Notes: generated by a model from the sequence alone, not told the origin. Shown: positions 28,297-43,074, counted from the stretch's first letter. The stretch is 64,000 bases of DNA from Macrostomum lignano (GCA_002269645.1 NIVC01001211.1:64393-128392), one strand, 5' to 3'. Numbers and translations: made by a program.

Positions 28297-29923
28297 CACC
28301 CGAGTGGCATCGATCTTATCGGGAGTAGATGTACCATTTTTTACCGATGTTATCGGGTTGAAAACATGGCGGGAATGTCGGCAACATGTCATCATCCCGA
28401 TATAATCGGGGCATAATGCTTTTAAATTGAGCATGTTTTGCGTTTATTTGAATTTCACGTTGCTAAATGTATAGAACTGGCCTAGCGTATTCATTTGCAT
28501 AAAATATATATTATGCTTGTGCTTCATGTGTTTGAAACTTTACTCGAGGTCAAGGCTCCCCTCAGTGTGGAGAGTTTTTGTATACAGGCTACAGGTTTTT
28601 ATAACTATGACAAATATTAATTAATGCTTTTACTTGGGTGCTTTTACAAATTCATCACCATTTACTCTAACCAATAAAATATTAATATTATTAATGTTAC
28701 CTAAGAGTGACAAACTGCAAAACTTCTTCAAGTTAGGCCTACCTAAAAATTGTTTGAAACCTTTAGACCAAAATAGGAAGAATTGATTTTAATTTATTGT
28801 CTATATATTTGATTATTTCTGCAAAATTCTTAAATTCTTAAATTCTTCTAGACCTTATAGAAGACTTCTTTCCTTAATTTATATTAGGAAAACTTTTGAA
28901 ATATTAATATGGTCATGGATTAACTTAACTATAGCTAAAAACTTTGAAAAGGAAGACAGAATAGGAGTCTAGACTATAGTCCTAGAAGGGGACAGATAGG
29001 GTATATCTATATTATATTGTCCTTTTATTGTCTATACTACCAATATATTCCTTATCCTTATGCTAGGCTCCTACTCTCTATATCCCTATATCCTCCTTGC
29101 CTTCCTTGCCTTCCTACTAGCCCCCTAACCTCTCCTAACCTCCTAAGGATTCCCATATCCTTATTGCTCTCCTACTAGGCTTTTATCCTCTATACCTTCT
29201 ATATATTTTTCCTTACCCTATTGCTAGGTTCTAATCCACCAAACACTATGCCCTCATTATCCTCTATATCCTCCTTTCCCATCTACTGGGTCTTACCTTC
29301 TATAATATATATCCTCTTGACCTCTTATCCTCTTGCTGGCTCCTATCCTCCATATCCTCAATATCCTTCTCTTTTTACTAGGCTCCTACCCTCTATAGTC
29401 TATACCCTCCTTACCCTCCTTCCCCACCTGCTGGCTCCTACCTTCCATATCTTCTTATTCTCTTGCTAGGCTCCTACCCTCCATGCCTTCCATACCCTCT
29501 ATGTCTCCTCCTAGGCTCCTTTCCTCTATGCCTTCCATGTCCTCCATGTCTCTACTCTCCTAGGCTCCTACCCTCCATGTCCTTCTTACCCTCCATACCC
29601 TCCATGCCCTCCATACCCTCCATGCCTCATAGGTTCTTACCCTCCATGCCCTCCATACCCTCTATGCCTCCTAGGCTCCTACCCTCCATGCCCTCTATAC
29701 CCTCCATGCCTCCTAGTCTCCTACCATCCATGCCCTCCATACCCTCCATGCCCTCTATACCCTCCATACCCTCCTTGTCCTCCTACCCTCTATACCCTCT
29801 TATCCTCCTGCTAGGCTCTTACCCTCCATGCCCTCCATACCCTCATCCTCCTGCTAGGCTCTTACCCTCCATGCCCTCCATACCCTCCATGCCTCCTCCT
29901 AGGCTCCTACCCTCCATGCCGTT
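28297..29923 (+). repeat. Left terminal inverted repeat (continues as diverging CT-rich minisatellite to ~30460)
   Basis: Position x maps to 71371-x at all spots checked; identical ORF translations on opposite strands; first indel noticed at ~29923. Confidence 0.9.
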
Positions 29924-30503
29924 CTTACCCTCCATACCCTCCATGCCTCCTAGGTTCTTACCCTCCATGCCCTCTATACCCTCCATGCCCTCCATACCCT
30001 CCATGCCCTTCTTACCCTCCATACCCTCTTACCCCCTCCTAGGCTCCTACCCTCCATGCCCTCCATACCCTCCATGCCTCCTCCTTGGCTCCTACCCTCC
30101 ATACCCTCCATGCCTCCTCCTAGGCTCCTACCCTCCATGCCCTCCATACCCTCCATACCCTCTTACCACCCTGCTAGACTCCTACCCTCCATGCCCTCCA
30201 TACCCTCCATGCCTCCTCTTAGGCTCCTACCCTCCATGCCCTCAATACCCTCCATACCCTCCTTGCCTCCTCCTAGAGTCCTAGGCTCCTACCCTCCATG
30301 CCCTCCATACCCTCCTTTCCCTCCTTGCCCTCCTTGCCCTCCTACCCTCCTTGCCCTCCTTACTCTCCTGCTAGCCTCCTACCCTCTATGCCTCTATCCT
30401 CCTTGCACCTGCCTTTCCCCCTACCCTCCATACCCCCCTCCATCTCCCCCGGCCCCAACCCCATATCCTTCATAGCCTCCTTGCCGCAGCTCTTTTATCT
30501 TAC

Positions 30504-40232: not shown

Positions 40233-41447
40233 CTGAAATTGTTTGCAAATATGCTACCAATTTCTAAATAGAGCCGATGGAGTACCATCACATAGAGGGT
40301 ACAAGGTGGGGAAATATAGCATTTTGCAGTCAAGTTTGAACAACAGGCAGTCAAGTTAGACGCTAGTGAAGCCGACCGAGTTAAAAAAGCAAAAACTACC
40401 TATGGTCACAGAAAAAAATCACATTAACTGGCAATCAAGTTAGACAGAAAGCACTCAATCCAGACACCAATTGCTTGTTGAAACCTAATACACGGATGAC
40501 TTTGAACATTCAACAACCTAGCAATTTCAGACACAAGATCACCACGCGGACAAGCCAAGCTTGTACGATTATAGCAAGTATAGCAAGAAGGGTACAGAGG
40601 GTATGGTAGGTAGAAGCCTACCAGCATGGAAGGACGAAATAGAGAGTAGGATCCTAGCAGGCAAGTAAAAGGGTATTGAAGGTATGGAGGGTACAGCGAG
40701 TAGGAGCCTAGCAGGCGGGGAAAGAGGGTACAAAGAGTGGGAGCCACGGGCTTCGAGCCAGCAGGAGGGCAAGGAGGGAATGGGAGATAGAAACCTAGCA
40801 GGCGGGGAAGGGGTGTAAGGAGGGTAAGGATGGCACGTAGTGTAGGAGCCTAGTAGGAGGGCAAGGAGGGTATGGAGGGTTGGAGGTAGGAGGACAAGGA
40901 GGGTATGGAGGGTTGGAGGTAGAGGACAAGGAGGGTATGGAGGGTTGGAGGTAGGAGGACAAGGAGGATATGGAGGGTAGGAGGACAAGGAGGGTATGGA
41001 GGGCATGGAGGATAGGAGCCTAGGAGGAGGGTAAGAGGGTATGGAGGGCATGGAGGGTAGGAGTCTAGCAAGTCTAGCAGGGAGGTAAGAGAATATGGAG
41101 GGTAGGAGGGCAAATAGGGTACGGAGGGTAGGAGGGCTAAGAGGGTATGGAGGGTAGGAGGGCAAGGAGGGTATGGAGGGTATGGAGGGCATGGAGGGTA
41201 GGAGCCTAGGAGGAGGCATGGAGGGTATGGAGGGTAGGAGCCTAGGAGGGGGTAAGAGAGTATGGAGGGTAGGAGGACTAGGAGGGTATGGAGGGTAGGA
41301 GGGCAAGGAGGGTATGGAGGGCATGGAGGGTAGGAGCCTAGGAGGAGGCATGGAGGGTATGGAGGGCATGGAGGGTAAGAGCCTAGCAGGAAGATAAGAG
41401 GGCATGGAGGGTAAGAACCTAGGAGGCATGGAGGGTATGGAGGGTAA

Positions 41448-43074
41448 AACGGCATGGAGGGTAGGAGCCTAGGAGGAGGCATGGAGGGTATGGAGGGCAT
41501 GGAGGGTAAGAGCCTAGCAGGAGGATGAGGGTATGGAGGGCATGGAGGGTAAGAGCCTAGCAGGAGGATAAGAGGGTATAGAGGGTAGGAGGACAAGGAG
41601 GGTATGGAGGGTATAGAGGGCATGGAGGGTATGGAGGGCATGGATGGTAGGAGACTAGGAGGCATGGAGGGTATAGAGGGCATGGAGGGTAGGAGCCTAG
41701 GAGGCATAGAGGGTATGGAGGGCATGGAGGGTAAGAACCTATGAGGCATGGAGGGTATGGAGGGCATGGAGGGTATGGAGGGTAAGAAGGACATGGAGGG
41801 TAGGAGCCTAGGAGAGTAGAGACATGGAGGACATGGAAGGCATAGAGGAAAGGAGCCTAGGAGGAGACATAGAGGGTATGGAAGGCATGGAGGGTAGGAG
41901 CCTAGCAAGAGAATAAGAAGATATGGAAGGTAGGAGCCAGCAGGTGGGGAAGGAGGGTAAGGAGGGTATAGACTATAGAGGGTAGGAGCCTAGTAAAAAG
42001 AGAAGGATATTGAGGATATGGAGGATAGGAGCCAGCAAGAGGATAAGAGGTCAAGAGGATATATATTATAGAAGGTAAGACCCAGTAGATGGGAAAGGAG
42101 GATATAGAGGATAATGAGGGCATAGTGTTTGGTGGATTAGAACCTAGCAATAGGGTAAGGAAAAATATATAGAAGGTATAGAGGATAAAAGCCTAGTAGG
42201 AGAGCAATAAGGATATGGGAATCCTTAGGAGGTTAGGAGAGGTTAGGGGGCTAGTAGGAAGGCAAGGAAGGCAAGGAGGATATAGGGATATAGAGAGTAG
42301 GAGCCTAGCATAAGGATAAGGAATATATTGGTAGTATAGACAATAAAAGGACAATATAATATAGATATACCCTATCTGTCCCCTTCTAGGACTATAGTCT
42401 AGACTCCTATTCTGTCTTCCTTTTCAAAGTTTTTAGCTATAGTTAAGTTAATCCATGACCATATTAATATTTCAAAAGTTTTCCTAATATAAATTAAGGA
42501 AAGAAGTCTTCTATAAGGTCTAGAAGAATTTAAGAATTTAAGAATTTTGCAGAAATAATCAAATATATAGACAATAAATTAAAATCAATTCTTCCTATTT
42601 TGGTCTAAAGGTTTCAAACAATTTTTAGGTAGGCCTAACTTGAAGAAGTTTTGCAGTTTGTCACTCTTAGGTAACATTAATAATATTAATATTTTATTGG
42701 TTAGAGTAAATGGTGATGAATTTGTAAAAGCACCCAAGTAAAAGCATTAATTAATATTTGTCATAGTTATAAAAACCTGTAGCCTGTATACAAAAACTCT
42801 CCACACTGAGGGGAGCCTTGACCTCGAGTAAAGTTTCAAACACATGAAGCACAAGCATAATATATATTTTATGCAAATGAATACGCTAGGCCAGTTCTAT
42901 ACATTTAGCAACGTGAAATTCAAATAAACGCAAAACATGCTCAATTTAAAAGCATTATGCCCCGATTATATCGGGATGATGACATGTTGCCGACATTCCC
43001 GCCATGTTTTCAACCCGATAACATCGGTAAAAAATGGTACATCTACTCCCGATAAGATCGATGCCACTCGGGTG
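41448..43074 (-). repeat. Right terminal inverted repeat (GA-rich minisatellite extension inward to ~40570)
   Basis: Reverse complement of 28297-29923. Confidence 0.9.

What the first reader, a model, noticed from the sequence alone, without database searches (positions are those of the whole stretch)
28297..43074. Apparently intact 14.8-kb KDZ/Zisupton-type transposon in a flatworm
Seen: exact 8-bp TSD, CA...TG termini, near-identical long TIRs and a frame-consistent 11-exon ORF with the D (HGDA), D (YDVAC) and E (DGEICE) candidates of the KDZ catalytic core. Known: KDZ transposases are described mainly from fungi (associated with TET/JBP and HMG genes) and fish Zisupton (8-bp TSD). Inference: a recent, possibly autonomous two-gene family with an architecture unlike described Zisupton.
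Basis: partly seen in the sequence, partly recalled or inferred. Interest (0 to 1): 0.85.

Follow-up and report, generated by a model that had tools for sequence, protein, structure and literature searches.

The report
Intact two-gene KDZ transposon, Macrostomum
This is a structurally complete, very recently mobile 14.8-kb cut-and-paste DNA transposon of the known KDZ (Kyakuja-Dileera-Zisupton) superfamily in the flatworm Macrostomum lignano; it carries a second conserved gene and unusually long inverted ends, so it is a well-defined new family, not a new kind of element.

Summary
Window 28297-43074 is bounded by a perfect 8-bp duplication (AATAATCG) and by inverted repeats identical over 1,627 bp, with termini CACCCGAGTGG...CCACTCGGGTG. 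A 10-exon (not 11) GT-AG gene encodes a 687-aa protein that matches Pfam KDZ (E=1.3e-31). The conserved D286, D402 and E447/E450 and the Cys/His motifs are intact.

The window is Macrostomum lignano contig NIVC01001211.1. A second copy on another contig has different flanks. It differs by 6 substitutions in 7.6 kb of internal sequence, so the family moved very recently.

A sister family (57-65% protein identity) has the same layout, a perfect 8-bp TSD (GGTGGCGC) and the same terminal 18 nt. Nothing else in the ends aligns.

Both families carry a second 5-exon gene on the opposite strand (46% identity, same intron phases). It is weakly HMG-box-like, and its tail is made of family-specific tandem repeats.

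The nearest relatives are at least 7 other M. lignano KDZ families, then other animals (priapulid, echinoderms, amphioxus, fish). Fungi are more distant.

KDZ elements with 8-bp TSDs, large size and extra genes are already known, so this is a new member of a known kind. Interest is moderate, not 0.85.

The parts
28289..28296 (.). Left copy of the 8-bp target site duplication, AATAATCG
   Evidence: Identical to 43075-43082. The same duplication is present in the haplotig L001.
28297..28314 (+). Terminal 18 nt, CACCCGAGTGGCATCGAT: probable transposase recognition and cleavage site
   Evidence: This is the only DNA stretch shared with the ends of sister family B (18/18 identical); nothing else in 2.2 kb of TIR aligns.
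28297..29923 (+). Left terminal inverted repeat, exact part (1,627 bp). It holds three CCGATnnnATCGGG palindrome hits, at 28344-28357 and, read on both strands, at 28396-28410
   Evidence: 100% complementary to 41448-43074. The palindrome is found 6 times in the window, all inside the two TIRs, against 0.01 expected.
29466..30368 (+). CT-rich minisatellite (periods 9, 45 and 62 bp) forming the inner, imperfect part of the left TIR
   Evidence: Tandem Repeats Finder. The inverted similarity continues to about 30439.
30504..33861 (+). Transposase gene of 10 exons: 30504-30914, 31093-31186, 31284-31501, 31644-31757, 31881-32167, 32257-32422, 32592-32766, 32857-32952, 33034-33186, 33512-33861. It encodes 687 aa with a B-box, a CxC-type Cys cluster, a KDZ catalytic domain and a helical C-terminal region with an acidic tail
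   Evidence: GT-AG model. Pfam KDZ E=1.3e-31 and B-box. Residues 9-687 are identical to NCBI model P0217. D286, D402, E447 and E450 and the Cys/His residues are invariant or nearly so across 32 sequences. The AF2 model has pLDDT 87.9. The 5' end is uncertain, because the NCBI models are flagged partial.
33862..38072 (.). 4.2-kb spacer between the two convergent genes, with no conserved coding sequence
   Evidence: No tblastn or blastn similarity to family B. No Pfam hit for its ORFs. No Rfam hit.
38073..40232 (-). Second gene (ORF2) of 5 exons: 40232-40163, 39978-39845, 39319-39188, 39071-38960, 38761-38073. It encodes 378 aa with a weakly HMG-box-like N-terminus, a conserved middle part and a repeat tail
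   Evidence: GT-AG model. The exon and phase structure is the same in family B, with 46% identity over about 210 aa and no DNA-level similarity. NCBI annotates a 324-aa gene with the same start and stop. Pfam HMG_box gives E=0.06 for the family-B protein only.
38212..38516 (-). 18-bp tandem repeat (16.9 copies) that encodes the PTVPNP repeats of the ORF2 tail
   Evidence: Family B has an unrelated repeat of 16 residues, which implies a 48-bp unit, at the same place.
40800..41930 (-). Minisatellite part of the right TIR
41448..43074 (-). Right terminal inverted repeat, exact part; it ends in ...ATCGATGCCACTCGGGTG
43075..43082 (.). Right copy of the target site duplication, AATAATCG

Best explanation
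Window 28297-43074 is an autonomous, recently active class II (cut-and-paste) DNA transposon of the KDZ superfamily in Macrostomum lignano. Shown: it is complete, with TSD, TIRs, an intact transposase gene and an intact second gene. It exists at several loci with near-identical sequence and different flanks. Inferred mechanism: the 687-aa protein binds the conserved terminal 18 nt (CACCCGAGTGGCATCGAT) at both ends, probably through its N-terminal B-box and CxC zinc modules. It pairs the ends. It then uses an RNase-H-like DDE centre (D286, D402, E447/E450), braced by an embedded Cys/His cluster, to excise the element. It reinserts the element at staggered cuts 8 bp apart, which produces the 8-bp duplication. 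The two genes point inward from the two ends. Because the ends are identical, each may carry the same promoter; this is inference only. The second protein is conserved between families. I think it most likely acts as a DNA-binding or DNA-bending helper for assembling the complex on the long ends, or as a regulator; this step is speculative. The flatworm families form one old, diversified lineage within an animal branch of KDZ, not a recent transfer from fungi.
For: Structure: perfect 8-bp TSD and a 1,627-bp perfect TIR. Transposase: Pfam KDZ 110.5 bits. All conserved D/D/E and C/H columns are intact in a 32-sequence alignment. In the AF2 model (pLDDT 87.9, pTM 0.84), D286 lies on a strand, D402 directly follows a strand and E447/E450 lie at the start of a helix, the order expected for an RNase-H-like DDE core. 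The B-box fold matches the PML B1-box (Foldseek probability 1.00, target TM 0.70). Mobility: the L005 copy on another contig has other flanks and its own flanking repeat. It differs from the window copy by 6 substitutions and 3 indel columns in 7.6 kb. The assembly holds at least 5 family-A gene loci. Sister family B has the same two-gene, long-TIR layout, a perfect 8-bp TSD (GGTGGCGC) and an identical 18-nt terminus. ORF2 is conserved at the protein level only, with the same intron phases. Phylogeny: the M. lignano families are monophyletic (97% bootstrap, NJ), next to other metazoans, with fungi separate. Published parallels: Zisupton and Dileera make 8-bp TSDs (PMC12730594). Cryptococcus KDZ1 (10.9 kb, 8-bp TSD, 236-bp TIR, extra ORFs) transposes in the laboratory (bioRxiv 10.1101/2024.08.15.608186).
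Against: No empty site, excision footprint or transcript evidence could be obtained, so current activity is inferred from structure and copy identity only. One copy (L005) shows a 7-bp, not 8-bp, flanking repeat. The N-terminus of the transposase is uncertain, because the NCBI models are 'partial'. No Pfam CxC profile hits the window protein at E<=1. The catalytic core has no significant Foldseek match in the PDB (best E about 1; ISCth4, IstA and Pop2p at low probability), so the RNase-H-like fold is inferred from secondary-structure order and motifs. The function of ORF2 is unsupported beyond a sub-threshold HMG_box hit (E=0.06, family B only) and automatic UniRef names that disagree (HMG box for the B models, MADS-box for the A models). 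The AF2 model of ORF2 failed (pLDDT 35). PDB sequence searches found nothing.
Confidence: 0.85

Rival explanations
1. The element is structurally intact but no longer moves. The near-identical copies would then come from recent segmental or polyploid duplication in the partly duplicated M. lignano genome, or from silencing soon after a burst.
For: The window and L001 are clearly the same insertion on two contigs (same flanks and TSD, 99.2-99.8% identity), so duplicated or haplotype contigs do inflate copy counts. No empty site was found.
Against: L005 has unrelated flanks that begin exactly at both termini, and it has its own flanking direct repeat. That is the signature of transposition, not duplication. 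The internal divergence of 0.08% and the perfect TIRs argue for a very recent event. Both ORFs are intact in every copy examined.
Confidence: 0.12
2. ORF2 is passenger cargo: a captured host gene fragment or a repeat-driven open frame with no role in transposition.
For: It has no significant domain hit. Its C-terminal half is a minisatellite that is open in several frames. Public gene models splice it inconsistently. Extra ORFs without a known function are usual in Cryptococcus KDZ elements (bioRxiv 10.1101/2024.08.15.608186).
Against: About 210 aa are 46% identical between two families whose non-coding DNA no longer aligns. All 5 exons and their intron phases are kept. This indicates purifying selection on a protein that has travelled with the transposase since before the families split. 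The only homologues found lie inside these elements.
Confidence: 0.3
3. The two long inverted arms are an assembly fold-back or chimaera, not a real element.
For: Perfect identity over 1,627 bp is unusual, and long-read assemblies can create palindromic artefacts.
Against: The arms are flanked by a perfect TSD. The same structure is present on three contigs, with small independent differences, and TIR identity is 98.7-100%. The sister family has the same design, with its own TSD.
Confidence: 0.01
4. The KDZ gene is a domesticated host gene, and the surrounding repeats are incidental.
For: Some animal relatives, for example in Lytechinus, are annotated as ordinary multi-isoform genes.
Against: The gene always lies between TIRs with TSDs. 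It occurs at several unrelated loci and is multi-copy.
Confidence: 0.02

Closest known systems
Zisupton / Dileera DNA transposons of the KDZ superfamily (Pfam PF18758; Bohne et al. 2012 as cited in PMC12730594 and PMC9297572)
   Same: Both have the KDZ transposase domain with D, D, E and the H..GH...C motif, an 8-bp TSD, TIRs and a multi-exon transposase gene. Both occur in animals as well as fungi.
   Different: The canonical Zisupton protein is described with CxC4 and SWIM domains (bioRxiv 10.1101/2024.08.15.608186), and the nematode proteins reach 1,400 aa (PMC9297572). Here the protein is 687 aa, has a B-box, and gives no SWIM or Ulp1-peptidase (PF02902) hit. Some fungal relatives do carry PF02902. 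The TIRs are 1.6-2.1 kb with embedded minisatellites. A second conserved gene is present. Placement relative to reference Zisupton and Dileera sequences was not tested.
Cryptococcus KDZ1, KDZ2, KDZ3 and KDZx1 (bioRxiv 10.1101/2024.08.15.608186)
   Same: They are large (6.4-10.9 kb) KDZ elements with 8-bp TSDs and TIRs, a CxC plus KDZ transposase and additional ORFs of unknown function. They are the experimentally mobile reference for this superfamily.
   Different: They are fungal (Dileera or Zisupton clade). The KDZ1 TIR is 236 bp. They have no B-box, and their accessory ORFs have no reported domains. The flatworm element is 14.8-15.3 kb, and a family-B copy spans about 23.7 kb.
Kyakuja (Kyakuja-1_LB and Kyakuja-2_LB; PMC12730594)
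   Same: Same superfamily, and the same 5'-CA..TG-3' termini.
   Different: Kyakuja makes 7-bp TSDs and has no TIRs, and it often carries TET/JBP. The element here has 8-bp TSDs and kb-long TIRs. No TET/JBP gene was detected: Pfam scans of the spacer ORFs and of ORF2 gave no family at a significant E-value.
Uncharacterised animal B-box-CxC-KDZ proteins (Priapulus XP_014669631, Lytechinus XP_041481377, Branchiostoma, Patiria, Apostichopus, Astyanax)
   Same: Same domain order, B-box then CxC1/2 then KDZ. They are the closest non-flatworm relatives (E about 1e-26 to 1e-20).
   Different: Identity is 23-25% (alignment) to about 30% (phmmer). Their transposon context (ends, TSD, second gene) was not examined here.

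Membership tests
KDZ transposase superfamily (PF18758) | Profile match to the KDZ domain above Pfam's gathering score | tested here: met
   110.5 bits against a cut-off of 26.6, E=1.3e-31, profile positions 42-213 of 217. Three separate exons hit consecutive parts of the profile.
KDZ transposase superfamily (PF18758) | Conserved catalytic D, D, E and the H-x2-GH-x3-C motif | tested here: met
   D402, E447, E450, H421, H425 and C429 are invariant, and D286 is nearly invariant, in 32 sequences from flatworm, other animals and fungi.
KDZ transposase superfamily (PF18758) | N-terminal CxC-type cysteine cluster (Pfam CxC1 to CxC7) | tested here: inconclusive
   No CxC profile hit at E<=1 for the window protein. 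However, its Cys cluster and the G-F-F-P...P motif align with relatives that do hit CxC1 or CxC2: Priapulus 6e-13 and Branchiostoma 4e-9.
KDZ transposase superfamily (PF18758) | RNase-H-like DDE fold | tested here: inconclusive
   In the AF2 model (pLDDT 87.9), the three residues sit on a strand, after a strand and at the start of a helix, in the expected order. Foldseek finds no significant PDB match for the core.
Zisupton / Dileera type element | 8-bp target site duplication | tested here: met
   AATAATCG in the window and GGTGGCGC in the family-B copy. One copy has 7 bp, GAGAGGC.
Zisupton / Dileera type element | Terminal inverted repeats | tested here: met
   1,627 bp at 100%; 98.7-99.5% in the other copies.
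Zisupton sensu stricto | SWIM zinc finger and CxC4 in the transposase (canonical architecture as stated in bioRxiv 10.1101/2024.08.15.608186) | tested here: not met
   The Pfam scan at E<=1 lists the KDZ domain; B-box, ZZ-type and other zinc-binding families; and DUF3645. It lists no SWIM and no CxC4.
Zisupton / Dileera / Kyakuja clade assignment | Phylogenetic grouping with reference (Repbase) sequences of one clade | not testable with these tools
   No reference sequences were available. My NJ tree shows only that the flatworm families are monophyletic and lie nearer to animal than to agaricomycete sequences.
Kyakuja | 7-bp TSD and absence of TIRs (PMC12730594) | tested here: not met
   8-bp TSD and long TIRs.
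B-box zinc finger (PF00643) in the transposase | Profile match and B-box fold | tested here: met
   26.1 bits against a cut-off of 24.1 on exon 1 alone, but 22.5 bits in the full protein. Foldseek matches the PML B1-box at probability 1.00 and target TM 0.70. The Cys/His columns are conserved in animal relatives.
HMG box (PF00505) in ORF2 | Profile match above threshold, or an HMG fold | tested here: inconclusive
   The family-B ORF2 gives E=0.06 and 14.2 bits against a cut-off of 25.4, at the expected profile positions. The family-A ORF2 gives no hit. UniRef names are 'HMG box' for the B models and 'MADS-box' for the A models. The AF2 model is unusable. There are no PDB sequence hits.

The most novel reading that the evidence does not exclude
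These flatworm elements may be a distinct two-component KDZ lineage in which transposition needs a dedicated, element-encoded HMG-like DNA-bending protein. That protein would work with a B-box transposase to synapse kb-long, minisatellite-bearing ends that share only an 18-nt terminal site. The HMGB1 requirement of RAG and Sleeping Beauty (recalled from memory) would be an analogue, but here the helper would be encoded by the transposon itself. If the element is active, it would also be a native large-cargo (about 15 kb or more) transposon tool for Macrostomum lignano, which I recall to be a transgenic model.
Probability: 0.25. Interest if true: 0.6.

Novelty: new member of a known kind. Interest (0 to 1): 0.4.

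Why it matters
KDZ is one of the least studied DNA-transposon superfamilies. No solved structure resembles its catalytic core, and the only mobility experiments I found are in Cryptococcus.

This flatworm family offers a cleanly delimited, apparently autonomous animal KDZ element. Its ends are exact, it has a minimal conserved terminal site of 18 nt, its transposase is intact and its candidate helper gene is intact. That is what an excision and integration assay or a structural study needs.

It also shows that M. lignano carries a large, old and still active KDZ radiation. This is relevant to annotating that genome, where these genes are currently 'hypothetical proteins' or carry misleading automatic names (MADS-box, THAP, DDE Tnp4).

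It does not change how this superfamily is understood.

Tried and rejected
1. An extra exon between exons 1 and 2 (30955-31057) and a 27-nt mini-exon (31554-31580). The first breaks the frame and the second introduces a stop, and the NCBI model agrees with the 10-exon structure.

2. ORF2 as a single ORF starting at MGAK. This was replaced by a 5-exon model once tblastn against family B showed upstream conserved exons.

3. ORF2 structure prediction from a single sequence gave pLDDT 35 and is unusable. PDB sequence and profile searches for ORF2 gave only noise.

4. A global alignment of the window end against L002 1-3000 was uninformative. The family-B terminus was found by aligning L002 against L003 instead.

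5. I looked for other genes or RNAs inside the element. There were no Pfam hits for the spacer ORFs and no Rfam hits.

6. A literature search for KDZ or Zisupton in Macrostomum or flatworms found nothing relevant. The Bohne 2012 paper is not held.

7. A first bootstrap tree with Biopython timed out and was redone with numpy distances.

8. The fold-back artefact and the domesticated-gene readings were considered and rejected (see the rival explanations).
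Full report
**Observation.**
The finding is accurate at the stated coordinates. The 8 bp AATAATCG occurs immediately outside both ends, at 28289-28296 and 43075-43082. The element starts CACCCGAGTGG and ends CCACTCGGGTG. The two arms, 28297-29923 and 41448-43074, are 100% complementary over 1,627 nt.

Inside that, the similarity continues imperfectly through CT-rich minisatellites (periods 9, 45 and 62 bp) to about 2.1 kb from each end. No other copy of the terminal sequence exists in the window.

**Transposase gene.**
Six-frame inspection and splice-site tracing give a 10-exon GT-AG gene at 30504-33861 on the + strand, encoding 687 aa. 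The two extra candidate exons I tried either break the frame or introduce a stop.

An independent NCBI model (P0217, 679 aa, flagged partial) is 100% identical to residues 9-687 of my model. The true start is therefore slightly uncertain.

Pfam gives KDZ (PF18758) at E=1.3e-31, 110.5 bits against a cut-off of 26.6, plus a B-box near threshold.

I aligned the protein with 31 relatives from flatworm, other animals and fungi. D402 (YDVAC), E447 and E450 (DGEICER), H421, H425 and C429 (HAYGHESKC), and C330, C358, H360 and C405 are invariant. D286 (HGDA) and the CxxC just before it are nearly invariant.

An AlphaFold2 model of residues 91-572, built on that alignment, is confident (pLDDT 87.9, pTM 0.84). 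It places D286 on a strand, D402 directly after a strand, and E447/E450 at the start of a helix. That is the order expected for an RNase-H-like DDE core.

Foldseek against the PDB recognises only the B-box (PML B1-box, probability 1.00, target TM 0.70). It finds no significant relative for the catalytic core.

**Host and copies.**
The protein's closest database matches are Macrostomum lignano proteins. Locus L006 shows that the window is contig NIVC01001211.1 of assembly GCA_002269645.1, with 100% identity over 23.3 kb.

- L001, on a second contig, carries the same insertion with the same flanks and TSD at 99.2-99.8% identity. It is a haplotype or duplicated copy of the same locus. It differs by a 1.3-kb TA-flanked element inserted in intron 8.
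- L005, on a third contig, is an independent insertion. Homology stops exactly at both termini, the flanks are unrelated, and it has its own direct repeat, GAGAGGC. That repeat is 7 bp; an 8-bp reading fails by one base.
- In 7.6 kb of unique internal sequence, L005 and the window copy differ by only 6 substitutions and 3 indel columns. Their ORF2 exons are intact.
- TIR identity within copies is 98.7-100%.
- Cluster look-ups show at least five family-A gene loci in the assembly.

Together this is strong evidence for very recent transposition. It excludes an assembly fold-back.

**Sister family.**
P0004/P0225 (57-65% protein identity) marks a second family, B, at L002, L003 and L004. It too has kb-long TIRs with an unrelated 34-bp minisatellite.

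Aligning two copies shows that identity begins exactly at CACCCGAGTGGCATCGAT. These are the same 18 nt as in the window element. They are the only part of the ends that still aligns between the families.

Using the family-B second gene as a handle (P0191), I reached the other end of the copy on NIVC01000038.1. Its flanks give a perfect 8-bp TSD, GGTGGCGC.

So the 18-nt terminus is under constraint, which makes it the probable transposase site. An 8-bp TSD is the family rule.

**Second gene.**
Between the transposase gene and the right TIR, on the minus strand, tblastn against family B revealed four conserved exon blocks where DNA-level similarity is nil.

Splice tracing gives a 5-exon, 378-aa gene at 40232-38073. 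Family B has the same five exons with the same intron phases, and the proteins are 46% identical over about 210 aa. NCBI annotates a 324-aa gene with the same start and stop in this contig.

The C-terminal tail is a family-specific tandem repeat: an 18-bp unit coding PTVPNP here, and a 16-residue repeat, which implies a 48-bp unit, in family B.

The N-terminus reads like a short HMG box (RKxSAWS...LTxEEKxxY). The evidence for that is weak:
- Pfam HMG_box gives E=0.06, for the family-B protein only.
- UniRef's automatic names disagree: 'HMG box' for B models and 'MADS-box' for A models.
- PDB sequence searches and a single-sequence AF2 model gave nothing usable.

Homologues were found only inside these two families. 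I conclude that ORF2 is a real, selected, element-borne gene, and its function is open. The 4.2-kb spacer between the two convergent genes shows no conserved coding or RNA.

**Relatives.**
An exhaustive phmmer search found 764 relatives at E<=1e-3.
- The top hits are all M. lignano: at least seven further families at about 30-35% identity, several of them multi-copy.
- Next come Priapulus, Lytechinus, Branchiostoma, Patiria, Apostichopus, Astyanax and a jellyfish.
- Agaricomycete proteins are more distant.

In a bootstrapped NJ tree the flatworm families are monophyletic (97%) and the fungi are separate. Priapulus and sea-urchin relatives share the B-box, CxC1/2, KDZ domain order. The lineage looks like an old resident of animals that radiated in Macrostomum, not a recent transfer from fungi.

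**Comparison with what is known.**
- Zisupton and Dileera make 8-bp TSDs. Kyakuja makes 7-bp TSDs and lacks TIRs (PMC12730594).
- Zisupton is multi-exonic and already reported from fish, lancelets, sea stars, mussels and nematodes (PMC9297572).
- Cryptococcus KDZ1-3 and KDZx1 are 6.4-10.9 kb, have 8-bp TSDs, have TIRs (236 bp in KDZ1; none was detected for KDZx1), carry extra ORFs and move in the laboratory (bioRxiv 10.1101/2024.08.15.608186).

The flatworm element fits the superfamily and the Zisupton/Dileera TSD rule. It does not show the SWIM/CxC4 architecture called canonical for Zisupton. Clade assignment needs reference sequences that I did not have.

I did not find three features described in the papers I could search: the 1.6-2.1-kb TIRs with embedded minisatellites, the conserved HMG-like second gene, and any account of KDZ elements in flatworms.

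**Verdict.**
This is a real, intact, recently mobile two-gene KDZ transposon, and a new member of a known kind. Its novelty is overstated, because animal KDZ and Zisupton elements and multi-gene KDZ elements are already on record.

Its value is as a well-defined animal KDZ element for mechanistic work, and for correcting the M. lignano annotation.

Noticed in passing
window 49058-64000: The window runs into an rDNA array: 18S at 51263-53075, 5.8S at 53747-53900, 28S at 54218-57975, and a second 18S from 62517 to the window end. The unit is about 11,254 bp and the copies are 99% identical. A full-length U1 snRNA gene (145 bits) sits in the rDNA intergenic spacer at 59765-59926. The KDZ element ends about 6 kb upstream of the array.
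   Followed up: partly
L001 11612-12912 (corresponds to window ~33030, intron 8 of the transposase gene): A 1.3-kb element with a TA duplication and the TIR CCGGGTGTCCGGATTGAACGGAAACGCTGC is present in the haplotig copy and absent from the window. It is a presence/absence polymorphism of another, Tc1/mariner-style, transposon nested in the KDZ element.
   Followed up: partly
L003 4899-4924: The target of the family-B insertion already contained GCCACTCGGGTG, 12 nt identical to a KDZ right end. It overlaps the TSD by 4 nt and creates the palindrome GCCACTCGGGTG-GCGC-CACCCGAGTGGC. It could be a solo end of an older related element or a preference for inserting at own-type ends.
   Followed up: partly
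L005 7868-7874 and 23220-23226: The independent family-A copy is flanked by a perfect 7-bp repeat, GAGAGGC, not 8 bp. Either the TSD length varies or the assembly has a 1-nt indel.
   Followed up: no
L002 13760-14976 (-): A Tc1/mariner-like transposase ORF (Pfam DDE_3, 25.5 bits, just under the cut-off) lies nested in the spacer of a family-B copy. Nested insertions may contribute to size differences between family-B copies.
   Followed up: no
window 1-17000: Host genes lie upstream of the element: an HLH transcription-factor exon (2457-3062, +), a TM9SF/EMP70 gene (8558-11620, -) and a CDP-alcohol phosphatidyltransferase exon (15107-15631, -). The sequence between these coding segments is packed with minisatellites of period 8, 14, 20, 22, 32, 33 and 37 bp.
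   Followed up: partly
M. lignano proteins P0025, P0027-P0029, P0032, P0033 (other contigs): M. lignano holds at least seven further divergent KDZ families (about 30-35% identity to this one). Several are multi-copy (for example Mlig004599 g2 to g29). They are monophyletic with the window family. An unnamed 748-aa protein from a Logan read assembly (P0031) nests among them.
   Followed up: partly
UniRef names of M. lignano gene models P0002, P0005, P0021-P0023, P0221, P0222: Automatic names for models overlapping these elements are inconsistent: 'MADS-box', 'THAP-type', 'DDE Tnp4' and 'B box-type'. They reflect mis-spliced models and should not be taken as domain evidence.
   Followed up: no
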